Source: Heteronotia binoei
Lineage: Eukaryota
Length of the DNA: 64,000 bases
Assembly: GCF_032191835.1 (NCBI RefSeq)
Contig: NC_083225.1
Span: 54,994,001-55,058,000, forward strand
Direction: 5' to 3'
A program made the position numbers and the translations under genes. This document shows, piece after piece, positions 1-24,787 of the stretch (its first letter is position 1; every line of letters starts with the position of its first letter). Below the pieces are notes generated by a model. That model was not told the DNA's origin. It ran no database searches and worked only from the letters and a program-made list of their open reading frames with translations.

Positions 1-790
1 TCAAGGCTGTGACAAGCATAATTGAACTCTAAAGGGAGTTCTGGCCATCACATTTAAAGGGACAGCACACCTTTTCAATTCCTTCCTTCCATAGGATATA
101 ATGAAGGATAGGGGCACCTTCTTTTGGGGCTCATAGAATTGGACTCCCTGGTCCAATCATTTTGAAACCTGGGGGGTATTTTGGGGAGAGGCACTAGATG
201 CTATACTGAAAATATGGTGTCTCTACCCCAAAAAACAACCCCCCAGAGCCCCAGATACCAGCAGATCAATTCTTCATGATTTTCTATGGGAATAAATCTC
301 CATAGGGAATAATAGAGTTCCCAGCAGACATTTCCCTCCCCTCCCGCCACTTTCTGATGACCCTGAAGCAGGGGGAGGGTCTCCAAACCGGGGGATCTCC
401 TGCCCCCACCTGGGGATTGGCAACCCTAGGGTGGAGCCAGAAGACATTGGGGGCAGAGCCAGGAGCAAGTGTGTGACAAGCATAATTGAACTTCAAGGAA
501 GTTCTGGACATCACATTTAAAGGGACCACACATCTCTTAAATCCCTTCCCTCCATAGGAAATAATGAAGGATAGGGGAACCTTCTTTTGGGGCTCATAGA
601 ATTGGAACCCCTGGTCCAATCTTTTTGAAACTTGGGGGGTATCTTGGGGAGAGGTACTGGATGCTATGCTGCAAATCTGGTGCCTCAACCTCAAAAAACA
701 CCCCCCCCCCGAACCATAGATACCCGCAGATCAATTCTCCATTATTTCCTATGAGAATAAGTCTCCATAGGGAATAATAGAGTTCCCTCC
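1..790. mobile_element. Two adjacent diverged copies of a non-autonomous squamate DNA-element-like repeat (GGCAACCCTA terminus family)
   Basis: 1-429 and 430-790 repeat the same blocks (TGTGACAAGCATAATTGAAC..CACATTTAAAGGGAC..GGGGCTCATAG). Related copies lie at 31342-32600, 1080-1225, 1400-1550, 35115-35300 and 57745-57990. Confidence 0.6.
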
Positions 791-1789
791 CCTTCCTCCG
801 TTTTCTCTCTCTTTCACTCACACACACGCTTAACTGTCTCTGGTGCAAGTCGGCAGCTGTGTTGGTCTGAAGCAGTAGAACAAAGCAGGAGTCTCTGGTG
901 CCTCCACAACCAGGTCTGTAAAGTACAGGGGCTACACTGCTCTTTTACACACACACTCGTCTGAAATGAAAGCAAAACAAACAGAGGGGCTGCACTCTCA
1001 CGAAGTCTGCTGTTGCTAACCCTTCCCCATGAAGTACTTCCTGCTCCAATTTAAAGGCACACACACATTTTAAAACTGGACCTGTTTGCAGGTCCTACCC
1101 AAGATCTAGAGGTACAGGATGACTATGGGGGAGGAGCTTCCCCTGCCGGCCAGCTGGCTGGGGGCGAGGGGAAGCCTGTAAAACTGGGGAATCCCTCGCT
1201 GGGACCTGGGGATTGGAAAGCCTACTTTTAACAGAGAATGTGGCATACACATTTATCTCCCCACAACCATACACACACACCAAAGTTCACTTGCTCTTAA
1301 GTCCCCACATCATTAAGTCCCAACACATGCTGCCTTGCCCACAGTGAGGGCAAAATTGGACATGATAGCAAGAAATCCATTCATGAAATATTGATATCAC
1401 CCTCCAGGTGGGGCCTGGAGATCAGTTCCTCTGGAGAAAATGGATGCTTCGGAGGATGGATTTTACGGCAATGTTCTCTGAGGTCCCTGTCCTCTCCAGG
1501 CTCCACCTCCAAATCTCCAAGAATTTCCCAACCTAGATCTGGCAACCCTATGAAAGTAGCAGCAGAGGCTGGGTTGGAGCTGTAGCATATGAGAGCAGGA
1601 CTTAACCATTTCTTACGGTTCTTTCTCCGAAGACTCCGCCATACTGCAAGTTTTATTCCATGAGCAAATAAATAGCCGTCTGTGATGGGTAATTTGCATC
1701 AGAAAAATAGCAGCAGAGGAGAGTTATCCCCCAGCATTCTTCACACGTTATCCCAAAAGGGATTGTACACTAACATCTAATCCTTGAAG

Positions 1790-2030
1790 ATAGATCCAGG
1801 TGGCCAGCCATGTTGGCCTGAAGCAGTAGAGCAAAGTTTGAATCCTGTGGCACCTTTAAGACCAACAAAGTTCTATTCAAAGTCTGAGCTTTTGTGTGCA
1901 TGTCCATACATGTAGGTATGGACTGGTAACTCCCATTTCAATGTATCTGAGAAAGTGTTCACGCACACAAAAGCTCAAACCTTGAATAAAACGTTGTTGG
2001 TCTTAAAGGTGCCACTGGACTTAAACTTGT
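1790..2030. mobile_element. Palindromic Penelope-like (PLE)-type non-autonomous repeat with a decayed hammerhead core
   Basis: Inverted arms GTGGCACCTTTAAGACCAACAAAG / TTGTTGGTCTTAAAGGTGCCAC. Relatives at 845-900, 40060-40200, 44205-44345 and 55790-55900. Confidence 0.5.
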
Positions 2031-2529
2031 TCTATCTGTAATCCCCATATAACAACAAAAAAAGTTTGAAGTTCATAGTTAGCATTCATTTATGGTTGAC
2101 TTTCATATAGCCTACATAAAATCATTCATAAGTCTTTTCTCCCCACAAGTTCATTTATTCTAGAAAGGCATTCATTGTAGGTAGGTGATGCTTCTGAACT
2201 GAACAATCACAGTTCTCCATCAGGCACTAAGAATTAATCAACAGTAAAACGGGCAAATGCTTTGCCTCTGCTTCATCAATGATATTGAAGAGCCTGAAGG
2301 ATTGTGACGAAAGGTCCACTTTTGCATCTTCTCCTAAAACTGAGCTTTGCTTTGCTTTTGTTAATACTCTCCAATATTTGCTTCATTAGTCTACTTGCTG
2401 TAGATTTGAGTCAAGTGTAAAATCAGAACACAGTATTTTACATTTAGTTCCCTTCTGGTAATATTAAAAAAAAAAATCACAATTCTCTAGGCAGAAGTTC
2501 AGCCTAGTGAAAAATTTTCCAGACAATAA

Positions 2530-2686
2530 AGGAAAGAACTGAAACTGCAATTCTGGCTACAGCACTGCACAGCTTTCTAAATTCCCCACCCAACACATCA
2601 GCAAGCCAATAGCAGACAACCAGAAACGAAGCTAATTTTAAAAGTGAAACTAAAAATCAGTTTGTCCTCTTCTTTCATTCTTCCAG
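2530..2686 (+). promoter_or_regulatory. IRF/ISRE-like motifs and CCAAT upstream of the lysozyme ATG exon
   Basis: AAGAACTGAAACT (~2533-2546), GAAACGAAGC (~2623-2632), AAAGTGAAACT (2641-2651), CCAAT (~2606-2610). Motif matches only. Confidence 0.35.
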
Positions 2687-2717
2687 CACTGAAGGAGACT
2701 AGAAACAACAAGGAACC

Positions 2718-5700
2718 ATGCGAGGTATTTATTTGGCTCTTGTATTTCCTGTCTTGTCTATTCAGAACTGAAGGAATATGTACAGGTATGCTGCACATTA
2801 ATCTTTCATAACTTAATTACAAGAGTTCTTTCTCATCTCCCCAAGATGCAAGCATATTACATTCCCCTTAAAAGTAAGAAGCAGCTTAAAAATACGCTAG
2901 GGATCACTTTCTCTTATGGTGCACATCACAGTGTGTGAATTATAGTTGTCAACTTGTCCCAATATTTTACTTCAAATTAAGACACTATCTTGAAAAGTAT
3001 ACTTCTCAGCTGTTGCTTGACTTTCTATGTGCTGGTAAAGGAAGTGTGAACACCAGCCTTATATAGATTACAACATTGTTCATAAAAGAATGGTCAAACA
3101 CTGGTAAAGCAAAATTCCATTCTGTGGAAATATTTAGCGTATTATTATCTGACTTTTCTAATAACTGGAGGCAGGGAGAGAAACTGTTGTTGAGGAATAT
3201 CTTGCCAGCTGCACATTTCTTCTGTGGTGCTTTGTCTGCTTCCTGCCTTCAGGTGTAAGGGCTTGGCTTAGCCAGAGGCATGAGTCAAATGACTCTTGGA
3301 TTGTCCCTCCCAGCTTGTTACTTCAAATGACTCAGCCTCTGAATCTGGGACCAGTCAAAGATCAGGATGTAGTCTGTTACTTTTTCTGGAGATGGATGAG
3401 GGTTTTGACACTAGTTCTGCAGCCACCATAAAAATGGAGCAGGAGGGTGGGTACACAAGCTGAGAATGGGATGTGGGACCTGCCTATGGATACAGAGGTG
3501 AGGGTTATGGTCACTGAAGGTGCAAGGTCATACTTCCAGAGGGCTGCAGAAGTGGGTGGCAATATCATGGCTTCAAGACCAGAAACCAAAGCCCAATGGC
3601 ACTCTGATGGGGTCAGGCCATGGAAGCAGTGAAAGAAAATTTGGCCACAAGCCAGGGGACAAAGACCATTCCTTAGCTTTTCCCAAAGATGGGAGGCAAA
3701 ACCTGACTTTTGTTGGCTCCCCACAAAACAGAGGAAAGGGGAGAGATTTGCAGGGACTGTGAACAGCTTTAATAGCTCAAAACCAAGGAAGACGTGGTTG
3801 GGGAACTGCCCTTTCCACAAAGCTAGCTGAGAGAAATATAGGAGAGCCCTTACAGGACAAGTTGGACCCAGCTGGAGTCAGCCCTCTTCACTCCCCATCA
3901 GCAGCCCCACAGTCGCGGAAGGTGAATTTGGTACATCCTCTGGTGGTCTCATCCCAATGGAGGCTTGTTAGCAACACCTTTGCTTGATGACCTACCAACC
4001 ACAGGTGGAAGTTTCCCTCCATGCCACTAGTGCCACCCACTTCCTCATATGCTCATATGAGCCTGCTTCGGTGGGGAGGGCGGAATATAAATTAAAAATT
4101 ATTATTTAATTGTTCTGTTTAATGTGTGTGGGTGTGTTTTTTTCTGTTGTAAGATGCATAGAGTTCTTTTGGTGAAAAAGCAAGTTAGATAAATAATTGT
4201 ACTTATTCCTGACAGGTTATTATTATGGCAAAATAATGATGGTTGAAACTACTGGGGCTTCTCTAGGAGTTGCAAGAGCAGAAGGCCTGAGTTATGGTGG
4301 TAAGTTGTCTATAGTTGGTTTATGGCCTCACAGTTATCTGCAGAGTTGAGGGAAAATCATATCTAGCATACATGGTCCTGCACTAAATGAAAGGGGACTT
4401 ACCACCTGCAGCAGCCTTCTGTGTTCCCAGAAAGTCAGTGGAACCCCAGTAACAGCACACTGTGGGTCAGGTCATTGGGTGGGAGGATACGTGTGCGTAG
4501 AGGAATTACTGAAAATGTCTCCATTCTGCAAACAGAACTGTTTTCTGCAAACAGAACAGGATATTGGGATATAAGCACATGTCTACTTCCACACTCGGTC
4601 TGAAAACACATTACAGTTGAGAAAAAACTAACAAGTAATACAAATTGAGGGAAAATATTGGCAAAAGAAGAAACCCAACCATTTTTACATAATTATCAAG
4701 AACAGGATAACTTCCTTTACAGAAACTTAAGAGCTTCTATGTATGTTATAGCTATCCAGGGAACCACTTGCTTATTTGGATGCCAGAGTGTAGTCTACTA
4801 ATAACGAATACCACCTTGATTGAAATCAATGTTTAGATTAAAAATAACAGCTCTGTTGGTTTCATTATTGTTTTATTGTTGACAAGAAATATATTTCTTA
4901 AGAGAGGTAGAATCAGCTAGTTGGGAGCTACTGTGTGTAGTGATCCCATTTTATCCCCAGTGGTCTTTAACTTGCATGTAAAACCTTTGGCTGAGACCAT
5001 CAGGAGCTTTGGAGTGGAATGTCACCAATACGTAGAGGACACCTAGCTGTGAAAGATCTGGGCCACCATCTATAGCCAAGCGGATGAGGAAAAACAAACC
5101 AAAGCTTAACCCAGACAAGATGGAAGTGATGCTTATTGGAAAGGCTGAGTGTTTAGCTATTATCAAGCCACTAGCCTTAGATGGTGTGAAGCTCTCTGTA
5201 TTAGATTAAGGTTGGGATTGCCACAGTTGTTATCAATCAATCAAAGGGGTCAGTGCTGTTGCCAGGAACACCTTTGTTCAGTTAAGAAGATATTGCAGGG
5301 GTGGCCAATGGTAGCTCTCCAGGGTTTTTTTGCCTACAACTCCCATCAGCCCCAGCCATTGGCCATGCTGGGTGGGGCTGATGGGAGTAGTAGGCAAAAA
5401 ATTCTGTAGAGCTACTGTTGGCCACCCCTGAGATATTGGATTTATATTCCGCCCTCCACTCCGAATCTCAGAGCTGCTCACAATCTCCTTTACCTTCCTC
5501 CCCCACAACAGACACCCTGTGAGGTGGGTGGGGCTGGAGAGGGTTCTCACAGCAGCTGCCCTTTCAAGGACAACCTCTGTCAAAGCTATGGCTGTCCCAA
5601 GGCCATTCCAGCAGGTGCAAGTGGAGGAGTGGGGAATCCAACCCAGTTTTCCCAGATTAGAGTCCACACACTTAACCACTACACCAAACTGGCTCTCTAA

Positions 5701-8700
5701 AGTCTAGGTTATAAGATGACCCTTTATTTAGGTTCTGTCAACCTAGCCATGCTGATCTACATAACCATAACCACTTCCACCTTAGATCCATTCCAGTCCG
5801 GCTTCCGCCCGGGCCATGGGACGGAGACAGTGCTGGTCGCTCTCATGGATGACCTCTGGCGGCATCTGGACCGAGGCGGCTCGGCGGTATTGCTGTTGTT
5901 AGACCTATCGGCGGCATTCGATATGGTCAACCATCAGCTGCTGACCAGCTGCCTCGCCGACGTAGGAATTCGGGGGCTAGCCTTACAGTGGCTTTCCCCC
6001 TTCCTTGAAGGTCGGTGACAAAGGGTAACAATTGGGGGAGAGGTGTCCCAGAGGCGCCTACTCAACTGTGGGGTGCCCCAGGGGGCAGTTCTCTCCCCGA
6101 TGCTGTTTAACATCTTCATGCGCCCCCTTGCCCAGATTGCCTGAAGGTACGGGCTGGGTTGTCACCAGTATGCTGATGACACCCAGCTCTATCTATTGAT
6201 GGGCGGCCGGACTGGAGACGTCCCTGAAAACCTGGACCGAGCGTTGCAAGCTGTGGCAGGGTGGATCAAGTCGAGTGGGCTGAAGTTGAATCCAGCGAAG
6301 ACAGAGGTCCTTTGCATGGGCCGCAGCGGGCCAGGGGAGGAGATCTCCCTACCAGCCTTTGATGGTGCGTCGCTGATACCAGTGAGCAGGGTCAAAAGCT
6401 TGGGAGTGCTTCTGGAGCCTTCCTTGACAATGGAGGCACAGATAGCTGCCACTGCCAAAGCCGCCTTTTCCCATCTTAGGAGGGCGAAGCAGCTGGCCCC
6501 TTTCCTGGAACCTGGCGACCTAGCAATAGTGATCCATGCAACCGTCACTTCGAGGTTGGACTACTGTAATGCCCTCTACATGGGGCTGCCCCTGTACCGA
6601 ACTCGGAAACTGCAGCTGGTGCAGAATGTGGCGGCTAGGCTGTTAGTGGGACTACCTCGGTGGGAGCACGTGCAGCCTAGGTTGCGGGAGCTGCACTGGC
6701 TGCCAATTGTGTTCCGAGTTCGTTACAAGGTGCTGGTTATTACCTTTAAAGCCCTATATGGCCGAGGACCTGTCTACCTTAGGGACCGCCTCTCTCCATA
6801 TATCCCCCAGAGAGCACTGAGATCTAGCTCCCAAAATCTCTTAAAAATCCCTGGACCAAGGGAGGCCAAATTGAAAACAACCTGAGAGCAGGCCTTCTCA
6901 GTAACGGCTCTTCATTGGTGGAACCTATTACCAGCGGAGGTTCGAGCCCTGCGGGACTATAATCAGTTCCGCAGGGCCTGCAAAACTATCCTTTTTCAAA
7001 TGGCCTACAAGATTGACTCCTGAAATGACATCTAAGCATCTGATATACATCTGATATGTCTTGCATTATAGCACCTTAATTGTAATGGTTTTAATTTATT
7101 AATTTATTTATTTAATGTATTTTACCGTATAATGTATTAACTGTAATCATGGCACTTTCCATGTCTGTGAACCGCCCTGAGCCTGCCTCGGCGGGGAGGG
7201 CGGGATATAAATAAAAATTATTATTATTATTGTATTGGACTACTGTAATGAAGTCTATATGGGAATGCCTTTGAAGGCAGCTCAGATGTTTTGGCTGGTA
7301 CATATTGCAGCAGAGAGACTCATGTCTAGGATCAGTTGTCTGGAACATGGAACTCCACTGCTGCATCAATTGCAGTGGTGACTGAACTACTTCTGAGCCC
7401 AATTCAATGTATTAGTTATGGCCCTGAAAACACTTCAGAGGCAGGGGCCCTCATATCTCCCGCTATAGTTTTACCCACCAACTACATTCTTCAGACAGCC
7501 TTCTGCTAATGGTTCCTCCTTTTAGGATTATCTCTCTGGCAACAATCAATGCAACAAGAGAGGACCAGCTGCAGAAACAGACTTCCATGCATACAGCCAC
7601 TGTCGATGTTTCTTCAGTGCTCTCTCAAGTCCCACAATATCTGTCTTGACTGGGATGTACTCCCTTGCTTTAGGAGAGCTAGTTCTTTATGAATATCTTA
7701 AGGTTGACTTGGGCTTGAAATGTCACTTAGTAAGCAATTTAACTGCATGTTTAAAATATTAGTTTCTTTTTGCACCAGGAGTCCAGGCTTCAGAAACTAT
7801 TGCAGCCAAAGACCTAAAAAATATGGAGAAATACAAAACAACAATTAAGAGTGTCAGTGAAAGCACAGGAATGGATGAAGCTGTGATCGCAGGTATAATC
7901 TCTCGAGAATCTCATGCTGGAATCATCCTGGACAACGGTTGGGGTGACCACGGAAACGGATTTGGCTTGATGCAGGTAAAGTGTATATTTCATGTGAATG
8001 CACAGATTGTAAGGCCCACTACTCATCCACTCCAAGTAATGGTACTATACTCTTGAGTTTAAAGAGGCAAATTATCCCCATCAAGTCAGAACTGGGTATA
8101 AATGCACATGTTCACATTCCTTGCTTATTACCCTACTTCACTCTGCCCTCTTTGTAATCTCCTGATCTTCAATCTTTGTAATCTCTCATCAGAAACTTAT
8201 ATTTTTTTTATCACTTTATAAAGCGATGTACACTGATAGTTTGGTATAAAACAATGATCTTTGCAAAATTAGTGAAATGTGTTAATGTTTCTTCTAGGTT
8301 GATAAAAGATGGCACAAAATAGAAGGCACATGGGATAGTAAGGCACATATTACCCAAGGTGCCAACATTCTGTGTGACATGATAGATGGTGTTGCTAAGA
8401 AGTTTCCACAGTGGACCAAGGAACAGCAGCTCAAAGGTACGAAATTACAAGGTCTAAAGTAACTTGGGACATAAGGATCCTTGTCTCAAGCCCTTGCTTT
8501 TCCAGCGCCAGCCCCTAGACCACATCCCAGACTGTCAAGGAGGATCCTCTGGTTGGGTGGGAGGGTATGTGTGGCTGCAGCAGAAAGGAGGATATGGAAA
8601 AACTTCACTGTATGAGAAGTCTATATAGTTAGTTGGTTCCATTGTGTAATGCAAAACACTGTCTTTAAAATGAGCCTTCTGTGTTTAGATTGTAATGCTT

Positions 8701-8962
8701 TAGCTAATCTATATTTGTGGGAAGTAATTTGTTTGAATTATTAATAATAGTAATTTGAATTAACAGATTCAACAGGATATGTATATTAAAGAATGTTTGC
8801 AATACAACTTCTTTTACTGTTATTCTAGGTGGAATTTCAGCCTATAATGCAGGACTTTCTAATGTCCGCACCTATGATGGAATGGATATTGGCACAACAG
8901 GGAATGATTATGCCAATGATGTTGCTGCCAGAGCCCAGTTTTTCAAGAGACATGGATTCTAA
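2718..8962 (+). CDS. LYG: Goose-type (g-type) lysozyme. CDS join(2718..2724,4216..4299,7779..7975,8298..8436,8829..8962) = 186 aa starting [18 protein letters not shown]. First coding exon is uncertain (see findings).
   Basis: Hand translation gives [66 protein letters not shown]. Catalytic Glu (SRES) and both Asp residues (WGD, QVD) are present. All introns are GT-AG with consistent phases. Position next to MRPL30 matches amniote synteny. Paralog (LygA/B/C, LYG1/2) not assigned. Confidence 0.93.
5284..5699 (-). mobile_element. tRNA-head, L2-tail SINE (Squam3-like), with its tail interrupted by a hAT MITE
   Basis: Reverse complement closely matches the + copy at 52698-52975, including A-box TGGTGTAGTGG and B-box GGTTGGATTCCC. 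Confidence 0.8.
5296..5430. mobile_element. Palindromic hAT MITE
   Basis: TIR CAGGGGTGGCCAA/TTGGCCACCCCTG with a perfect 8-bp TSD AGATATTG. Sister copy at 16036-16170. Confidence 0.85.
5770..7235 (+). mobile_element. Young 5'-truncated L2 LINE (RT domain to 3' tail)
   Basis: [73 protein letters not shown] few premature TGA stops consistent with CpG decay. Tail GGGAGGGCGGGATATAAAT(A..TTA)n. Confidence 0.92.
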
Positions 8963-11932
8963 TAATGGTTTTAATCGCCTGTTTGGCTACTTTTAAGTAG
9001 TTATTTACAACAAACTCCTTTAGTAAAACTTAATTTTTATGTTATCTATAAAAACATAATTCTGTTTGCTTGAAGAGATTCATAATGTTTGGTAAGATTA
9101 ATGACAGACCAAGTTGTGAAGCAGGAATCCTGGTGAAAATCTTGCCTCTACTTCCACTCACAAGCCAATAACCTTTCTGTGCACTCCTATTTCTAAGGAT
9201 TGTTGCAGCAACATACACAACATGCATTCAAGTTTGTTTCATCCACTAGGCTAAATAGGACAGAAAGAGAGAGTATGGAAAGATGACCCAGACTGTCAAA
9301 ACTTTGAATTGTTTTTTGTCACTAGGCAGATCACTTGGCATTCTTACTGTACTGGAGGAAAAACATATTGTCTGTTTAAAAGAATGTGCACGTTTGTGTT
9401 TGCAAACTACCATTTTTGTGCTTGCAATTAATCCACAAACTGAATATCCATTCTGAAGTAATTTGCCATATCTGACTGACTGACAGAACAATTCAAGTAA
9501 TATTGCCTCTATAAACCCAGGTTTCTGAAGGAAAGGCCAACAGTTTGGCACACCAGCCTTGTCCTGAATTCATCTATAGACTTAGAAGGCAGTCTTAAGA
9601 CTTTGTGTACTTTGCCCATGCTCTTGGAATGTTACCTTTCACCTCTTTCCTGGAATACACATTGTGTTAGAGCTAAAGGTAAACATCTGTCTCCCTGTTC
9701 TGCACGCTTGTAGTAAATGATTGTGTAAAGAAAAGCGTATAAAATAAACGACCACTGTCAGAAAGACAGAGACCGGTGCGTAGAACCTCAACCCTATGTT
9801 ATGATTCCTTCAGGTTTCATTTCTGCTTATTCCTTCTATACATTTGTCCATTCCTTTCAAAAGCCACCTATTCTAATGTGTTTCAACATCACAGGGTAAT
9901 GAATCTTTAACATCAGTTAACAAAATTATGCAAAGTACTTTCCTCTGTCTGCTTTAAATGTCATTTAACTAGACGAGCCAGAGATCTAACGCTGGAAAGA
10001 ATTAGTTTATATGACAGAATTCTGTAACTACTACCCTGTCTATATACACCTGCTTTTCTCTGACTTAAGAGGACAACTAATTAAAAAAAGATACTCCAGT
10101 GCCTAACCCATGGCCCTTTTAGAGCATCTTAGACTATGATGCTTGTTTTCATTTAGTCTTTTTCAATAATGTTTTACTTTTCTGTATTGCTGATGATTTC
10201 AGCAGTTTCATAACACCACAGTTTCATTGCTGAGTCATTACAGATATTTTACAGCAGCAACACCATGGTTATGACTTTTACCCCCCGCCAAAAAAAAATT
10301 ACAGATGGAAATTCATCTGCTATTTGAAAATCCTTTGATGAACTTCTTGCTGCGTTTGAAAATGGAGTGAATACCAACAATTGTCTTTAAAACAAACTCT
10401 TTACATGCACTGAAACAAAATACTCACAAACCACCAGCAGCTAACTGTTCATGAGAACTTGGGGGTTCTTCAAAAATCTATATGAATATGAATTGTTTAG
10501 CAAGAAGACAAGCATCTTCGAAAGGAAGTTTGTGAATTTATTTCAAATTTGATTTCCACCTTTCTTCTAATGGGCTTTAAGAAGGACAAAAGAGAATATC
10601 CAATTGGATGCAGACCAGTAAGAATACTTATATCTTGAAAGTACTAACGTATCATTTAATCTACTCTAATAAACCCTTAACCCTCCACCACACTCAAATT
10701 TTCCAAGGAGCCATCCAAAACCATAACTGAAAAACCCTACCAAGTAACACTGACTTGCATCTCTTTAGAGAGGTCTATAATGAAGGTCTTCCAGACTATT
10801 CCGTAACATAACCTGTCAAGCATTCTATTTCTAAGTACTGGTTCATCCATACTTTCCTTTCTTCCCTTCTGACACCCCCCCTCCATTCTCACTTCTCTCT
10901 GGAAATGCATAATAAATCTTGTTTTGCTTCAGGATGTGTAGGGTAACCTTGTATTAGCAATGTAAAGTGCCTCTCCCCCAGATTTTCGCAGCCATGCCTT
11001 ATCAGCTAGCAGAGAATGTGTGAGAAATGGAGATGTTAACATTCCTTAGTTGCCACAGAGATATTAGTAACTAGCCTTTGAACCTTCAATGCAATTTGCA
11101 TCTTTGGGTTATTCTTTTGAAGTTAACTGTAATCCTGTCTTTGAAGTAACTTTTAAGATACTAATTAACAGTGTGACCTGTATTACTTCCAAGGTATCAG
11201 TCCTTGGAGCAAGTCACTGAGTTTCAATAAAACAAGTCTTTGATTTAAAACAAAAAAACTTGATTATTTCTAAATATCGATGCTTGACATAACCTGCCAG
11301 GGTAAGAGGGAACACACAATAAATAACCAATCTAGGGAAATACAATGAATTCATGTAAGGAGAGTCAGTGAGTCAATTCATGAAGATCAGTCATGTCACA
11401 GTCTGCTGGTACTGAAGAGTATTGGATTGTGCTCACTTCACAGAGGACAGCAATAGGGCCCCACCTTGGCCAATGGCTGCATGAAGCAAGACCATGCCCT
11501 GAAAATGTTCTAGAATCTTCTACAATGCAAATAGATTCCTCTGCAACAAGACCCTGTAAAAAAGAGCCCCCTCAAAATAGAAAATTTAAGAACTTGTGCT
11601 TTAAGTAGTGTTCACAACAGCATAACTATAAACCAGAATTTATGCACAAGTCCAGACTGTGCAACATGCCACATGGAACAGATGGAAACTCACCTGCCAA
11701 ATTAAAGTCCAAGCTTTAATTTGAAAATCCTTTGATGAACTTCTCTAATTTAATTCATTAGCTACCACTAGAAGGTACAGACAGAGATTCCTTAACTAAT
11801 CTACTATATAGTGAAATTATCTTAAACAACATGCCACATGGAACACTTTTGTGTTCTAAGAACTGGATATAGTCATGTTTGACTAAACAGTTTGGAAAAT
11901 GTCTTTGCAGGATATGAAGATCTACTTTCCAA

Positions 11933-12130
11933 ACAGCCAGTGTTGCATAGTGGTCAGAGTGTCAGATAGGAACTGGTTCAAACCCCCGCCCCCTCTGTCA
12001 TGGAAGCTTGCTGGGCATCCTTGGGCCAGTCACATGGTCTCAGCCTACATAACAGGGTTGATACAAGAATAAAATAGAAGGCAAAACAAAGTATGCTGTC
12101 CTCTAGGGAAAAGTGGAGTATAGATGAACT
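11933..12130 (+). mobile_element. Degraded tRNA-derived SINE
   Basis: CAGCCAGTGTTGCATAGTGGTCAGAGTG head and CTTGGGCCAGTCAC core. Relatives at 14500-14735, 28810-28985, 34060-34195, 37605-37830 and 56770-56910. Confidence 0.6.
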
Positions 12131-12191
12131 AAAGTAATAAAGATTACTGAATGTTAATATAGCTATATTTATTATACAAATTTACTGCATT

Positions 12192-15100
12192 TTACGATGA
12201 GTCTATGGTTTTCTGTTCCACTGGTTGTAGACGACGGCGAATTACTAGTTCTCCTTTGCTGTTAATATAGCAATCAGACATCTCCTCTTCAGTTGGAATT
12301 CCATGGGGTAACTTTAATGGCTGTATTCTACAGATGTTAAAAAACAGACACGCATTTTAATACACACACGCACATATTCTACAAAAGGTATTTTAGGTAA
12401 TGCTAGCAAAAAGTGCTGACTAACCTTACTAGGTGTTTGATGACTTTCAGTTTTGCATTCACAGTAGGAATGTTTTTGTGTACTACAGGCTCAAACCGCT
12501 GTAGATAAATAGATTTCAAACAATGAGATTCAGTGTCACATTCATTGCTTATATACAAGCACAAAGTGCTCTTACAAACATGTAAGATCAAGTAGCACAG
12601 TCTATTAAAGCCATCCTATTTAACAAACATCCTGTTTAATAAAAATACAAAAAAAATGAACATTGTTTCTTTTAGTACCACAAGACAGATTTCAGTATAA
12701 TTATAATATGGGTTACAATTCGCTGTTGTATTTAATTCATTATGAAAAGCTACCACTAGAAGGTACAGAGATTCCTTAACTAATCTACTATATGGTGAAA
12801 TTATCTTTAAAATGCTGAAGTCTTGCAACAAGAGAGAGGCCATCTCAGAGGAAAATGCCAACTGAATTTTCATTTCACTATACTCTGACTTGTCTACAGG
12901 TGTTAGCCATCCCACCCCCTCCAGATCCAGGGTTACTAGCCAAGGCCATCTCTCAGGTCTGTTAATTAGCTCACACAGTTCAGCTGTGAATCTGGTAAGG
13001 GAGGGCAGAGCATGCTCCTGTCCAGAATGTTCCACTGAAGCAGCTCTGTGATTGGTTGGGGGATGCCAGGAAGTTATGGCCAGTTTTTTCTATAAAGTAC
13101 AGCCTATTGTGAAGGGGAACATCTGTTTTTCCCTTTGCATTTCTTGCTTTCCTTATATGATCTGGAACCAGGGGTGACTTGTCCAGTAGGCAAACTAGGT
13201 GGTTACCTAGGCCGCCGGGAGGGGGCAAATTGGGCTCTCCCCCCACGCCGGTGCCCCAGGCAAGCACCTAGTTTCCCCCCCGCCACTAGCCCCCTCCACT
13301 GCCCCCCAGCCGCAGCGCTCTGCTTGCCCCCACCTGCCACGGTGCTCCGCTCACTCACCACCACCGCGCTCCGCACCGCTCTCTGCCCCTCAAAGCTCAC
13401 TGCAACTAAAAGTAAGCCCTGCTGGCTTCTCACAGCCCGCGCCTGCGTTTTGTTAAGATTCATCTCTTTAAAAAACACGCAGGCATGGGCTACGAGAAGC
13501 CGGCAGGGCTTACTTTTAGTCGCAGCGAGCGGGGGGGGGGGGGGAAGTGGAGCGCTGCGGCAGGTGGGGGGCGAGTGGAGCACCGCAGCTGGGTGGTGCC
13601 AGGAGGGAGGTGCCTCCCTAAGGCGCTAATCACCCTAGAGTCGCTCCTGTCTGGAACACCATGCTTTAGCTTTAAAAAACCCTGCCATCTCTGCCATAAG
13701 AACCAAGTAGTTAGCCAGTTTACCTTTGTTATTCTGCTGTGCATTTGACTGTCACTAAACTATATGCAATGTTTTAAAATATTTTCTTGAATTTCATTAT
13801 AAAAGCTCCCTCTTTTTGCTGTATGGTGTGTTACTGGGGAGAGACCTAAGCCAAACCCAGGTTAAGCTTGGTTACATTACAGCAATAAAGCAGGATCAGC
13901 CTTGACATCTTGCTATTTAGTTTCCCCTTGGCAAAGCATGGTTGCCATGTCACTCTGCCTTGTCATGCAGGTGTGAAGAGCATCCCCACAAACTCAAGCT
14001 ACTATTTACACACATAGTATTGCATGTGACCAGGGCTCATTTTGTAGCAGCAGCTCCTTTGCATTTTAGGCCACACACCCCAATGCAGTCAATCCTCCAA
14101 AAACTTACAGGGTTCTTCTTATAGGGCCTATTGTAAGCTCTTGGAGGATTGGCTGCATCAGGGGTGCATGGCCTAATATGCAAAGGAGCTCTTGCTGCAA
14201 AATGAGTTCTTCATGTGACTATTTCTGAATTAGAGGTCAGTTGAGATTCACATGTGGGAGAAAATACTACCAAGAAAGGCACTACCATGCACACACGGAA
14301 ACTAAAATTTTCCACTCCACATCCAAATTAATCTTTCCTGCAGAAGACCGAGGATGTGATAATGTACAGAAAATTTAAAAGCAAAACTGCATCACCATTT
14401 GCTACTGCCCTCTCTTTGTTAAGCAAGAAAAAAGCACCTCAAAACCCAGCTGTTTTTGAAGCTGACCTTTGTCTACCTGTACAGTGGAGCTGGCACACAG
14501 TGTAGAATTCCACTACGGTGCAGAGCCAGCACAGTTTTATGGTGTCAGACTAGGATCTGGGAGACACAGACTCGAATCACCACTCTGCCAGGGAAACATG
14601 CTGGGTGATCTTGGGCCAGTCACACCTGCTTCTCAGGGTTCTTGTGAGGGTAAAACGGAGGAAGAGAACACAATGTGAACCACACTGGGTCCCCACTGAA
14701 GAAAAGGCAGGGTTATAAATGAAGAAAATAAACAAATGCTCTGTTTGTGTGTTCATTAAGCCATTGAATTAATGGCCTTTTCTATGCCTTTTGATTGGTG
14801 AGACTGCATTTTCCCTGACCTGGATAGCCCAGGCCCGCCAGATTTCATCAATTCTTGAAAACCTGAGGTCAGCCCAGGTCAATATTTGGAAGAGATACTG
14901 GCAAAGAATACCAGGGTTGTGATGCAGAGGCGGGAAATGGGAAGCCACCTCTGAACATCTTGCCTTGAAAACTCCATGGGGTTGCCATAAGTCAGCTGCG
15001 ATTTTGATAGCAAAGGGGGGGGGGGGGGAGACTGCAGCTGGAAACAGGAAGCACCAACATAATAGTTACAATCCAAAAGCATGCACTTTGCATGCACCAG

Positions 15101-18100
15101 GATGTTATGAAGCCTTCTCTGAAAAACACAAAGTATCCCCTTCTATGAAAATGGGAATATTTTAAAGGGAAACTGGCAGAAAATACCAAGAAAACAGCAG
15201 CAATAATTGCTTATTAATGTGCAAGCAATTTCCACCTTGCTTTTTGAAGTCAGGGGATGCTCTGTTGACTATAACTGGGGCAAAATATTTCTAGTTCTTA
15301 GCTTCCAAAATTAAGTTATGGGGTAGGGAAAGAAAGATGGAGAACAAAGCGTTCCTGGAATGCATACTGGCAGGAAGCAGTAACAATTATCATGAATATA
15401 GTAAAGGGATGGCTATATGAGAAGGTGGTAAATGAAATTACTGGAGTCTGAAATTATTGGTTGCTTACACCAATTAGAATTAGTGGCTTGACCCCAGTGA
15501 TTAGGTCTGATGATGAAGTCTCAGCTGTGCCTATCTTTCTTTTCAGTTTGCATGTTACAGCTAGCTCCATACGTAGTTTAAATTGGGAACCTCAAGCCTG
15601 AATAACCATGCTAAGCCTTTCACTACAAAGTTCCTGGAAGGAGAATCAGGACTCCTATTGAGAGTGTTATAGCCCTCCCTACAGAGGAAGCTGCTTGTTT
15701 CCTTTGTTTTTTCCCCTTATGTTTTGTGGGTGGCTAAAGAGAGTTATTAGAGAGTGATGACAATGGCAACTTGCAGTGGTTGATTTCATTCATGGTTGAT
15801 ACAGGAGTGCCCTTGGCTTGCTGCTCCATAATTGGCTGATGTGAGCAGCGTCACTATGGATACCAGTTCAGCTGCCATGCTTTCAACAATCAATCTTTTT
15901 GTAAGTATCTTCTCATTGCTGAGAGAGCACAGGACACCTAGTACCTGCTAGCTATGCTAGTGCTAGGCTATCAATGCACAGAATTCAGGGCTTAAGTTGG
16001 GGCGGCCCAATTCCAAACCTGCAAATACTCTATTGCAGGGGTGGCCAACGGTAGCTCTCCAGATGTTTTTGCTGACAACTCCCATCAGCCCCAGCCAGCA
16101 TGGCCACTGACTGGGGCTGATGGGAGTTGTAGGCAAAAAACATCTGGAGAGCTACCGTTGGCCACCCCTGCTCTATTGGAAAAAAATCCAGTTAGTAAAT
16201 AGGCTGCTAAGCATGATTCAAACTAGACTTACTACACTGACAAGCATTAACGACGAAGAAAAAGTTCTTAAATTTCCCCACCCCCGAGAATAGGACAAAG
16301 CGGGGGGACTGCCAATGGGTCGGATACCTTTCCCAATCCAAGACAGTGTATTGTATCCTTTTCCCAATAAGGACGCCTTCTTCCACTTTTGATCCTAGTG
16401 ATAAGGTGCAGCTTGTGAGGTTGCTCTGGATCACCACCATATTTTTCATGATCACCAGGTTGTGGCTGAAATACCTGAAATAAGTTCAAGAAAGTTACGG
16501 TAATTACTAATTAACAAAATTACTATTTTAAAACTTTTAAGCAGTCAATAAAAATAAGATCTGCATAACAACTCATAAGGTGGCTAAAAGAACATCATGA
16601 TTTTAATCAAAAAGATACTCATCAATTTCTTTGCTATAAACCTACAGTGAAGACAAATATACCTATCACCAGGGTTTTTTTCTGGTGGAATGTGGTAGAA
16701 CGTAGTTCAGGAACCTCTTCGTGAAAACAAAATCCCCCCACCCACCCCCCAAAAAGTTTACAATTTCATGAGGGGAACCCATGCGTTTCTCCTCCATTTC
16801 CCTCTTAAGAGTTCCGGCACCTCTTTTTCACAAAACAAAGTCCTGCCTATCACAATGCTGAGAGAGATCTATAAAAGGTTTATATTTCTCAATAATATAC
16901 AGAACCACCCCCTTACAATACAGAATCAACTTTTTCTTTGTTCTTTTTTTGCCATCAAGCTGACTTATGGTGACTCTGTAGGAAAGGCAGGAGACATTCA
17001 GAGATGGTTTGCCATTGCCTGATTCTGCATAGCAACATTGGACTTCCCTCCTGGTCTCCCATTCAAATACTGACCAGGACTCACCTTATTAGCTTCCAAG
17101 ACCTGACAAGATCAAGCTTGCCTAGACTATCCAGGACAGGTCACAAAATCAACTACATGTTCAAAATTCAGTGATAAACCAAATTAAATAATAAACCAAA
17201 AAACCAAAATCATATTTTTACTTGGTAGCTTGGGTGTGTCAATATAATGCAAAAATACTGGACATTTTCATTTATAGGTTACAAACATGAAAATAAAACA
17301 AATGAAAGTTTTCCAACACATTGCTTACCGATTCAGGAATACGTGATCTTGTAAATTTCTGCCGAATCCAACTGACTGACTGTACCGTATTTTTTGCCAA
17401 ACTCTGGAAGAGGTGGATGGGCGGGGGAAGAGAAAAACTTGTCTTATTATTGATAAAACATTTATACCCCACCTTTTTTCTTGGTGAAAGGTGATTTTAA
17501 CATTCCTAACTGGAGTATGTGTGTTCTATCAGCATTTCTGTTGGAAATCAACTCTTTGTTGACTGAGTAAGTTCATTTATAATTTAGAGTGATTAATGAA
17601 GGGGAAAAGATCAGAGCAAGCTGTCTCAGGTGGCAACCCTAATAAATAAGCACTATCCTATTTAAAATAGCCTTTTATTCTTTAATTACAGTAATATAAC
17701 AAAGGGGGGAGGGGGAAGCTACAGTAAACCCAGAATTAGCCACAGAGTTGTTTACTGTGTTTAGTCCAGTGTAGTAGCCAGAGCTCAGGAGCAATAATTA
17801 ATTTATAAAATTAGAGCAGCAAAGACCAAAATCACACCCTCTGTTAGAAGTCTTTCTCTCTGACCTTTGGGAGTCGGACATAAAGTGCAATCTTAAAAGG
17901 TAAGCTCCACTGAAGAGCCTTGAGTCAGATTCTGCGTAGATCTGTTTAGGACTGCACCATTATTCACGATCAAAGAAATACCCTGCAGACACACAGGTGA
18001 ACAAATTACTCTGCAGAACGGAACAACGCTCCGATGGTCAGCCCTGTTTAACAGCGTAGACTTCCTCCACCCTAAACCCAATGAAATCAACGCGGTCACT

Positions 18101-18277
18101 ACACACACAGTATTACGTTGCAGCAATTAAACGTCGCTGCAGCACAAAACGTCTGGCATGAGCAAAAAACTGAACTCATCAGACAGTTTGGGACGTTCTT
18201 CGTTCCTTTCGGCACCGTCTCACCTGCCAAACCCCCGAAGGAGTTCCCCACGCAGCCCGGCACAACAACGCCGCCAT
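12192..18277 (-). CDS. MRPL30: Mitochondrial ribosomal protein L30, 161 aa. Minus-strand exons 18277..18224, 17403..17329, 16474..16328, 12498..12425, 12327..12192.
   Basis: [18 protein letters not shown]|[25 protein letters not shown]|[40 protein letters not shown]..|[25 protein letters not shown]|[16 protein letters not shown]. 486 nt in total, GT-AG introns, strong Kozak context (AAGATGG). Confidence 0.96.
13169..13649. mobile_element. hAT MITE with a long internal inverted repeat, in MRPL30 intron 3
   Basis: Imperfect TIR CAGGGGTGACTT / GAGTCGCTCCTG, perfect 8-bp TSD TCTGGAAC, GC/CpG-rich interior with a hairpin centred near 13458. Confidence 0.85.
14031..14211. mobile_element. Palindromic hAT MITE (GCATATTAGGCCACAC family)
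   Basis: TIR CAGGGCTCATTTT, 8-bp TSD CATGTGAC. Relatives at 35690-35874, 36290-36360, 37935-37980 and 47030-47142. Confidence 0.75.
16036..16170. mobile_element. Palindromic hAT MITE
   Basis: TIR CAGGGGTGGCCAA with a perfect 8-bp TSD CTCTATTG. Confidence 0.85.
16670..16845. mobile_element. hAT MITE
   Basis: CAGGGTTTTTT..AAAGTCCTG termini with a perfect 8-bp TSD CCTATCAC. Confidence 0.75.
16940..17135 (-). mobile_element. 5S rRNA-derived SINE with a BovB/Sauria-like tail
   Basis: Reverse complement of 17052-17118 aligns to 5S rRNA (GATCTCGTCTGATCTCGGAAGCTAAG..TTAGTACTTGGATGGGAGACC), followed by GGCAATGGCAAACCA..TCACCATAAGTC. Other copies at 14815-15010 (+) and 42745-42955 (-). Confidence 0.7.
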
Positions 18278-18624
18278 CTTTGAGTCTCTGCTCCAGCCTT
18301 CTACGTATGACAGCGGCCTCTTTTGGCTCGCTCAATCCCAGACGGCATGCTTTACTATTTCCGATATGTTAGGGGAAAGAGAAAGTCTAGGAACACGTCT
18401 TATCTATGGTCTCTCCGCTTCTCCGGTGCAGAGAAGGTTTCGCTTTCCACTTCCTAAGATTCGCATGATGGTCAGGAGGAGGCGTGGAGTCCACTGTTTT
18501 GATAGGAAGTTGCCCACCTGCGGGGTTGCGGCTAAGCTCCAGGGAGTGCCTCGTGCTTGCAAGGCCGGATTGTGCAGAAGCCGCGAAAAGGTCTCCCCCT
18601 GCTGGGTTCGTTTCCCGGCACACC

Positions 18625-24787
<6,163 letters not shown>

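What the first reader, a model, noticed from the sequence alone, without database searches (positions are those of the whole stretch)
2687..2790. Lysozyme g signal-peptide exon is 1 nt out of frame, and an internal donor rescues a signal-less enzyme
From the ATG at 2718 to the donor ACAG|gtatgc at 2786 is 68 nt, but 67 are needed to stay in phase with the next exon. As read, the frame stops after [17 protein letters not shown]. Deleting one base in GTATTTCCTG (~2742-2751) gives a textbook signal peptide, [23 protein letters not shown], fused to [14 protein letters not shown] second donor, CGAG|gtattt at 2725, gives in-frame MRG-YYYGK.. (186 aa) with no signal peptide. This may record a switch from a secreted to an intracellular lysozyme, or it may be a polymorphic or assembly indel. 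The whole exon 2687-2785 is 99 nt, phase 1-1 and open in the signal-peptide frame, so an upstream ATG exon could also restore a secreted or anchored form.
Basis: partly seen in the sequence, partly recalled or inferred. Interest (0 to 1): 0.7.

Follow-up and report, generated by a model that had tools for sequence, protein, structure and literature searches.

The report
Decayed signal-peptide extension in gecko lysozyme g
The out-of-frame "signal-peptide exon" is a decaying leftover that still encodes a working signal peptide in two neighbouring lysozyme genes, and this gene instead uses the old splice site just after its start codon to make an already annotated lysozyme without a secretion signal.

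Summary
From ATG 2718 to the donor at 2785|2786 is 68 nt. That is out of phase with exon 2 (4216), and the frame stops at TGA 2769-2771.

The window is Heteronotia binoei (GCA_032191835.1). The "internal donor" 2724|2725 gives exactly the 186-aa RefSeq protein.

That 7-nt coding exon 1 is the normal, old state of the signal-less LygC lysozyme group. It is seen in birds, tuatara, other squamates and four other gecko genera, and in an anole mRNA-derived CDS.

Stretch 2725-2785 is truly homologous to a signal-peptide-coding extension. The extension is 70 nt and in frame in two tandem paralogues (207 and 210 aa).

In the orthologues of Gekko, Paroedura and Eublepharis the extension is also broken, by partly different lesions. 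An assembly error or recent polymorphism is therefore unlikely.

Exons 2-5 are under purifying selection (dN/dS 0.25-0.34).

One result goes beyond the finding. The extension is absent from three non-gecko squamates. It looks like a micro-duplication of the exon and its T-rich upstream tract, so geckos probably gained this signal peptide anew.

The scan has noted other frameshifted signal-peptide exons elsewhere in this genome, but not this gene.

The parts
2642..2651 (+). IRF/ISRE-like motif AAGTGAAACT upstream of the first coding exon
   Evidence: The same AAGTGAAA(C/G)T lies 55-75 nt upstream of the ATG in all 7 signal-less squamate genes read. It is absent from the -90 windows of the 3 signal-peptide paralogues. 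Its function was not tested.
2660..2686 (+). T/C-rich tract ending in AG. This is copy 1 of the micro-duplicated unit. It is either the acceptor tract of the ATG exon or core-promoter sequence.
   Evidence: Sequence. It is conserved in the gecko orthologues. It is similar to the T-rich core of 2735-2765.
2687..2724 (+). First coding exon as used: 5'UTR part 2687-2717 plus ATG 2718-2720 plus 4 nt, ending at the proximal donor CGAG|GTATTT. The 5' end of this exon has not been demonstrated.
   Evidence: It equals residues 1-3 of RefSeq protein P0178. ATG-NNN-G|GTATT is conserved in all squamate LygC loci fetched.
2725..2785 (+). Decayed signal-peptide extension, copy 2 of the micro-duplication. 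It is now the first 61 nt of intron 1. TGA lies at 2769-2771 in the ATG frame.
   Evidence: It is 75% identical to the in-frame extension of the 210-aa paralogue. ATG to the distal donor is 68 nt here against 70 nt in the paralogues. There is a direct repeat 2684-2696 / 2763-2775.
2786..2791 (+). Distal donor GTATGC. It is the working donor in the paralogues and is still intact here.
   Evidence: The same position is GT in Gekko and Paroedura and CT in Eublepharis.
4216..4299 (+). Coding exon 2 (84 nt, phase 1 to 1). An in-frame TAA at 4194-4196 closes any 5' extension of this exon.
7779..7975 (+). Coding exon 3, which holds catalytic Glu73 and Asp86.
8298..8436 (+). Coding exon 4. It begins with Val-Asp, where the Asp is Asp97.
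8829..8962 (+). Coding exon 5, with stop TAA at 8960-8962.

Best explanation
The gene at 2718-8962 is the Heteronotia binoei member of the LygC group of goose-type lysozymes.

Its productive mRNA joins the 7-nt coding exon 1 (ATG CGA G, donor 2724|2725) to exon 2 at 4216. This gives a 186-aa enzyme that is Met plus three residues plus the complete mature lysozyme, with no signal peptide.

The 61 nt between the proximal and distal donors are the decayed remnant of a 63-nt extension. In the two upstream tandem paralogues the extension is read through to the distal donor and encodes a hydrophobic N-terminal signal sequence.

In this copy the extension lost its frame. A 4-nt loss is shared with other gekkonids and a further 2-nt gain is specific to H. 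binoei. The stretch now behaves as intron.

Shown:
- the sequence relations, the lengths and the frames;
- identity of the short-exon product to the annotated protein;
- purifying selection on exons 2-5;
- phylogenetic nesting within LygC.

Inferred:
- which donor the spliceosome actually uses in H. binoei;
- that the paralogues' N-terminus works as a signal peptide;
- that the extension arose by micro-duplication in the gecko stem.
For: Identity of the gene:
- L001 from position 7284 on is identical to window 1-18962, and the called gene corresponds to window 2718-8962.
- P0178, named "lysozyme g-like" of H. binoei, matches every exon exactly when the proximal donor is used.
- P0178 residues 5-186 align with residues 4-185 of mature black swan lysozyme, E = 4e-78.

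The short exon is the normal state:
- The orthologues in Euleptes, Paroedura, Gekko and Eublepharis are all 186 aa and start M-A-x.
- Other squamates, tuatara and bird LygC start the same way.
- Irwin 2014 (PMC4243810, supplements) lists anole and python genes as LygC without a signal peptide. It gives an anole CDS from a transcript that begins with ATG plus 4 nt and then exon-2 sequence.

The extension:
- ATG to the distal donor is 70 nt and in frame in Hbin210, Emac210 and Hbin207.
- It is 68, 66, 65 and 65 nt, with early stops, in the four 186-aa genes. Eublepharis has also lost the distal donor.

The enzyme body is maintained:
- dN/dS for exons 2-5 is 0.25-0.34 against three orthologues.
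- Glu73, Asp86 and Asp97 are invariant.

Phylogeny:
- All gecko genes form one clade inside LygC, both nodes with support 100/97.
- An AU test rejects signal-less LygC as a clade that excludes the gecko signal-peptide genes, p = 0.010.
Against: - Donor usage and the exact 68-nt length rest on the assembly and on RefSeq models that are themselves predictions.
- By consensus matching the distal donor (G at +5) looks stronger than the proximal one (T at +4 and +5). It is intact in the three gekkonids, so some transcripts may still use it.
- The 4-nt gap shared by the gekkonids depends on the alignment of a T-rich stretch.
- The AU-test group was named after the tree had been seen.
Confidence: 0.8

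Rival explanations
1. Assembly error or segregating indel. Under this view the true or common H. binoei allele has an in-frame 67- or 70-nt exon 1, and the gene also makes a secreted isoform.
For: Removing one base anywhere in 2721-2768 would join two open frames into a hydrophobic N-terminus like that of the paralogues. Reads could not be checked.
Against: The same stretch is out of frame in Gekko (66 nt, stop at codon 9), Paroedura (65 nt) and Eublepharis (65 nt, distal donor lost). There is therefore no reason to expect an intact frame here. The main lesion, a 4-nt gap, is shared by three genera and does not look like a homopolymer miscount.
Confidence: 0.05
2. Both donors are used. The distal donor yields an unproductive mRNA with a 17-codon ORF followed by a premature stop. 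Such an mRNA could be a target of nonsense-mediated decay or act through an upstream ORF. Donor choice would then tune how much enzyme is made. This could coexist with the best explanation.
For: The distal donor ACAG|GTATGC is intact and fits the consensus better at +5 than CGAG|GTATTT. It is retained in the three gekkonid orthologues.
Against: There is no transcript evidence. The stretch evolves at least as fast as its non-coding flanks: 86% identity to Gekko, against 94-95% for the 5'UTR and the intron start. Eublepharis lost the distal donor with no visible harm to the gene.
Confidence: 0.25
3. An upstream ATG-bearing exon splices into 2687 in phase 1. It would read the open frame through 2785 and give an N-terminally extended, secreted or membrane-anchored form.
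For: The in-phase frame is open over 2581-2808, and an AG with a T-rich tract precedes 2687. Some snake LygC models have N-terminal extensions from upstream sequence.
Against: The in-phase frame is closed by a stop in Paroedura. It lies in a different frame relative to the ATG in Gekko. It cannot be spliced in Eublepharis. RefSeq has no such product among the hits. The snake extensions use the ATG frame, which here has a TAG at 2700-2702.
Confidence: 0.03
4. The extension is not a gecko novelty. It is the ancestral lysozyme g signal peptide, or an older squamate duplication, kept in geckos and deleted in other lineages. Under this view the gene records a plain loss.
For: Tandem copies can be removed cleanly by recombination between them, so absence in Rhineura, Elgaria and Candoia could be secondary. 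Only three non-gecko squamates and one bird were read.
Against: The signal-peptide genes are nested inside signal-less LygC. The body of the extension resembles the gene's own upstream tract and 5'UTR rather than anything expected of an old coding sequence. Bird, crocodilian, tuatara and squamate LygC proteins share the short N-terminus without the extension, and the short exon itself was read in the bird and squamate loci.
Confidence: 0.2

Closest known systems
Amniote LygC lysozyme g (chicken g2/LygC, anole and python LygC; Irwin 2014, PMC4243810)
   Same: It sits in the same clade and has the same position next to MRPL30. It has five coding exons with conserved phases and no signal peptide. 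It lacks the disulfide cysteines of egg-white LygB. The catalytic residues are kept.
   Different: Irwin found a single LygC gene in anole and python. H. binoei has three tandem LygC-derived genes, and Eublepharis and Paroedura have at least two. Two of the H. binoei genes carry a signal-peptide extension of exon 1. This gene carries a decayed copy of that extension.
Salmon and other teleost lysozyme g, with secreted and non-secreted forms made by alternative splicing (cited in PMC4243810)
   Same: The choice of splice site near the start codon decides whether a signal peptide is encoded.
   Different: In fish the choice is an alternative acceptor that lengthens coding exon 2. Here it is a choice of donor in coding exon 1. 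In this gene only the short form has an open frame, and a 5' extension of exon 2 is closed by TAA at 4194-4196.
The tandem H. binoei paralogues P0192 (207 aa) and P0195 (210 aa)
   Same: They have the same 5' architecture, the same proximal G|GT, the same distal donor position and alignable flanks. They are the same enzyme family with the same catalytic residues.
   Different: Their extension is 70 nt and in frame. Their proximal site reads GTGTTT instead of GTATTT. They lack the upstream AAGTGAAA motif within 90 nt.

Membership tests
Goose-type lysozyme (GH23) | Full-length sequence similarity to solved g-type lysozymes | tested here: met
   P0178 residues 5-186 match residues 4-185 of black swan lysozyme (E = 4e-78) and also goose lysozyme. 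Exon 3 alone gives E = 2e-23.
Goose-type lysozyme (GH23) | Catalytic Glu73 with Asp86 and Asp97 (goose numbering) | tested here: met
   These are invariant columns E73, D86 and D97 in alignment A4.
Goose-type lysozyme (GH23) | Pfam SLT domain above the curated cut-off | tested here: inconclusive
   P0178 has no hit. The paralogues score 16 bits against a cut-off of 21.3. The model appears to be weak for this clade.
Goose-type lysozyme (GH23) | Muramidase activity | not testable with these tools
   This needs an enzyme assay.
LygC paralogue group of amniotes (Irwin 2014) | Groups with bird LygC and with anole and python LygC in a tree | tested here: met
   The LygC clade has support 100/97 and holds all the gecko genes.
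LygC paralogue group of amniotes (Irwin 2014) | Located in the lysozyme g cluster beside MRPL30 | tested here: met
   A Ribosomal_L30 gene lies on the minus strand 3.2 kb downstream, followed by a gene with MIT and MIT_C domains. The same layout is seen in Gekko, Paroedura and Eublepharis.
LygC paralogue group of amniotes (Irwin 2014) | No N-terminal signal peptide; coding exon 1 holds only the ATG plus 4 nt | tested here: met
   The 186-aa product starts three residues before the start of the mature enzyme. This architecture is conserved. SignalP was not available.
Genes that make secreted and intracellular isoforms by alternative splicing | Both splice forms keep an open reading frame | tested here: not met
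   The long form is 68 nt, out of phase, and stops at 2769-2771.
Genes that make secreted and intracellular isoforms by alternative splicing | Both junctions present in RNA | not testable with these tools
Pseudogene | Disrupted or neutrally evolving coding body | tested here: not met
   Exons 2-5 are intact, with dN/dS 0.25-0.34 against three orthologues. All splice sites are canonical.

The most novel reading that the evidence does not exclude
In the gecko stem lineage, a tandem micro-duplication of about 80 nt copied the first coding exon together with its T-rich upstream tract and its donor. A deletion of about 19 nt then left a net gain of 63 nt.

Reading through the first donor to the duplicated donor now translates former upstream-tract and 5'UTR sequence as a hydrophobic core followed by a polar end. 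This would give the long signal-less LygC lysozyme a new secretion signal.

After the gene duplicated, the copies divided the two forms by donor choice. The secreted copies have G at +3 of the proximal site. This copy has A at +3, and its extension is decaying.
Probability: 0.5. Interest if true: 0.65.

Novelty: new variant of a known kind. Interest (0 to 1): 0.45.

Why it matters
As written, the finding is mostly explained. The signal-less 186-aa enzyme is the annotated product, and signal-less is the known state of LygC.

What is worth keeping is the comparative picture. Geckos carry secreted and non-secreted LygC copies side by side. The copies differ by which of two donors, 61-63 nt apart, is used.

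The secreted form appears to have been built from duplicated non-coding sequence. If that holds, it is a compact, datable example of a signal peptide being born and then lost again in one copy. Minigene and secretion assays could test it directly.

It also corrects the view, based on anole and python, that squamates have a single lysozyme g gene.

Tried and rejected
- The first word search, with exon 3 inside its 97-aa open frame, returned only fragments and short proteins because of the length filter.
- The second search, with an alligator protein, was swamped by birds and turtles.
- A first profile alignment misplaced exon 2 on a frog template that lacks that region. It was replaced by A2, which has exons 3-5 as separate rows. 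That search brought up the geckos.
The RefSeq protein returned by the search was compared with the window exon by exon, and split codons were checked singly.
- P0196 (Hemicordylus) is not on record as a gene product.
- Pfam SLT falls below its cut-off for these proteins.
- A fish-like 5' extension of exon 2 is ruled out by TAA at 4194-4196.
- There is no second lysozyme g gene in the window.
- The ATG at 2778 was considered as an alternative start. It leaves 8 nt before the distal donor, which is also out of phase.
- Two literature searches found nothing on gecko lysozyme g or on this way of making a signal peptide.
- The large representative-protein search, structure prediction and fold search were not needed.

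Full report
**What is at the coordinates**

- ATG lies at 2718. The ATG frame runs 17 codons to TGA at 2769-2771.
- A good-looking donor, ACAG|GTATGC, lies at 2785|2786.
- Exon 2 starts at 4216 behind AG 4214-4215 and needs one base from the exon before it.
- ATG to 2785 is 68 nt, so that join is out of phase.
- The frame that is in phase is open over 2581-2808 but has no ATG in the exon.
- A second GT directly after the seventh coding base (CGAG|GTATTT, 2724|2725) is in phase.

The rest of the gene is clean. The exons are 4216-4299, 7779-7975, 8298-8436 and 8829-8962, all with canonical splice sites. It is the only lysozyme g gene in the window.

**Identity of the gene**

Exon 3 alone matches solved goose-type lysozymes at E = 2e-23.

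A profile made of exons 3, 4 and 5 as separate rows on a frog template (A2) retrieved gecko proteins. The best hit is P0178, "lysozyme g-like" of Heteronotia binoei, 186 aa.

The contig that encodes P0178 (GCA_032191835.1, CM063327.1) is identical to the window over the 18,962 bases they share. Its gene call corresponds to window 2718-8962.

P0178 equals the window's exons residue for residue when the proximal donor is used. The three split codons were checked one by one.

P0178 residues 5-186 align with residues 4-185 of mature black swan lysozyme. The product is therefore Met plus three residues plus a complete mature enzyme. Glu73, Asp86 and Asp97 are invariant.

**The short exon is the normal state of this gene family branch**

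Irwin 2014 (PMC4243810) divides amniote lysozyme g into LygA, LygB and LygC. He reports that LygC lacks a signal peptide in chicken, turkey, pigeon, alligator, anole and python.

His supplement gives an anole CDS taken from a transcript. It begins with ATG plus four bases and then continues with exon-2 sequence. His python sequence starts with an N where that tiny exon could not be found.

In my data the orthologues of four other gecko genera are all 186 aa. They start M-A-x followed by the same mature N-terminus. Other squamates, tuatara and bird LygC start the same way.

The DNA shows ATG-NNN-G|GT in every locus fetched, including an amphisbaenian, an anguid, a boa and a curlew. The gene sits next to MRPL30 and a gene with MIT and MIT_C domains, as in Irwin's synteny maps.

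**The 2725-2785 stretch is nevertheless a real relative of a signal-peptide sequence**

H. binoei has two more lysozyme g genes just upstream on the same strand. They encode 207 and 210 aa (P0192, P0195).

Their exon 1 starts with the same ATG-GCA-G|GT. It then reads on for 63 more bases to a donor at the position that corresponds to 2785|2786. This encodes a hydrophobic N-terminus.

The window's stretch aligns with theirs at about 75% identity, and both flanks are alignable.

ATG to the distal donor measures as follows:
- H. binoei 210-aa gene, Eublepharis 210-aa gene and H. binoei 207-aa gene: 70 nt, in phase.
- The window: 68 nt.
- The Gekko 186-aa gene: 66 nt, with a stop at codon 9.
- The Paroedura 186-aa gene: 65 nt.
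- The Eublepharis 186-aa gene: 65 nt, with the distal GT changed to CT.

In the MAFFT alignment the three gekkonid 186-aa genes share a 4-nt gap. H. binoei has two extra bases further on.

Eublepharis is best read as a separate 5-nt deletion, because the rest of its T-rich core is nearly identical to the 210 type. That reading is my own interpretation of the alignment.

The frame was therefore lost long ago and at least twice. This makes an assembly slip or a young polymorphism in H. binoei unlikely.

**The enzyme body is maintained**

Per-exon Nei-Gojobori counts, summed over exons 2-5, give dN/dS of 0.34, 0.25 and 0.26 against Gekko, Paroedura and Eublepharis.

The relic stretch is less conserved than its non-coding flanks: 86% identity to Gekko, against 94-95% for the flanks. 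A translated, selected protein with no conserved in-frame start other than the 7-nt exon argues that the proximal donor is the one that matters. This is an inference, not an observation of RNA.

**Where the extension came from**

A maximum-likelihood tree puts all the gecko genes, with and without the extension, in one clade. That clade lies inside LygC, and both nodes have support 100/97.

An AU test rejects a tree in which the signal-less LygC genes form a clade without the gecko signal-peptide genes (p = 0.010). The caveat is that I named the group after seeing the tree.

Rhineura, Elgaria and Candoia lack the 63-nt body. After ATG-GAA-G|GTATTTG their sequence continues with what follows the distal donor in geckos.

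The body itself resembles the gene's own upstream T-rich tract, the CAG, the first ten bases of the 5'UTR, and then the bases around the ATG and the donor:
- A 16-nt exact match links the Rhineura upstream junction to the gecko body.
- Local alignment scores beat all 1000 dinucleotide shuffles in several pairs.
- The repeat finder reports a 29-nt direct repeat at spacing 77 in Gekko, and 2684-2696 against 2763-2775 in the window.
- The Gekko self-alignment shows the whole unit with one gap of about 19 nt.

I therefore think a tandem micro-duplication of the exon with its flanks, net +63 nt, created the extension in the gecko stem. Its hydrophobic core would then be translated upstream-tract sequence. 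I hold this at about 0.5-0.7.

The alternative is an older duplication, or an ancestral signal peptide, that was deleted elsewhere. It cannot be excluded with three non-gecko squamates.

**Donor choice**

The signal-peptide genes have GTGTTT at the proximal site, and the 186-aa genes and the non-gecko squamates have GTATTT. By consensus matching, the distal donor of the window (G at +5) looks stronger than the proximal one. That judgement rests on my own knowledge of the donor consensus, and no scoring tool was available.

Some unproductive use of the distal donor is therefore possible. It would give a 17-codon ORF followed by a premature stop.

- An upstream ATG exon reading through 2687-2785 has no comparative support.
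- The ATG frame upstream of 2718 is closed by TAG at 2700-2702.
- A fish-like 5' extension of exon 2 is closed by TAA at 4194-4196.

**Verdict**

The signal-less enzyme is the annotated, ancestral-type product.

The frameshifted stretch is a decayed copy of a signal-peptide extension that is alive in the neighbouring genes. That extension is probably a gecko invention.

Earlier notes of this scan report frameshifted signal-peptide exons in other genes of this genome. None concerns this locus, and none changed my reading.

Noticed in passing
window 2642-2651; also L004, L005, L006, L007, L009, L010 at 55-75 nt upstream of the ATG: An IRF/ISRE-like AAGTGAAA(C/G)T is conserved upstream of all seven signal-less squamate LygC genes read. 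It is missing from the 90 nt upstream of the three signal-peptide paralogues. This hints at different regulation of the two forms.
   Followed up: partly
window 12192-18277 (-) and from about 18625 (+): An MRPL30-like gene (Ribosomal_L30) and a gene with MIT and MIT_C domains lie downstream. This matches the conserved lysozyme g neighbourhood.
   Followed up: partly
window 5700-7050, inside intron 2: Long open frames resemble a reverse transcriptase (a 246-aa frame at 6145-6882 containing YADDTQLY). This is probably a LINE fragment inserted in the intron.
   Followed up: no
window 2721-2723: Codon 2 is CGA here but GCA in every other gecko gene read. The two bases are swapped, which gives Arg instead of Ala and CGAG instead of GCAG before the proximal donor.
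   Followed up: no
L002 (H. binoei 207-aa gene): Its exons and introns are closest to the 186-aa gene. Around exon 1, however, it is more like the 210-aa gene (77% against 69%), and it has the intact extension. It may be a chimera or a product of local gene conversion.
   Followed up: partly
P0197, P0213, P0198 (snake lysozyme g models): Snake LygC models carry hydrophobic N-terminal extensions upstream of the usual MEA start. This may be another, independent route to a secreted form.
   Followed up: no
P0182 (Gekko kuhli, 177 aa): This model starts at an internal Met of exon 2 and groups with the H. binoei 207-aa gene. Its first exon was probably missed by the annotators.
   Followed up: no
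window 137-292 and 600-716: Two similar open frames about 460 nt apart start NWTPWSN and NWNPWSN. They point to a repeated element near the start of the window.
   Followed up: no
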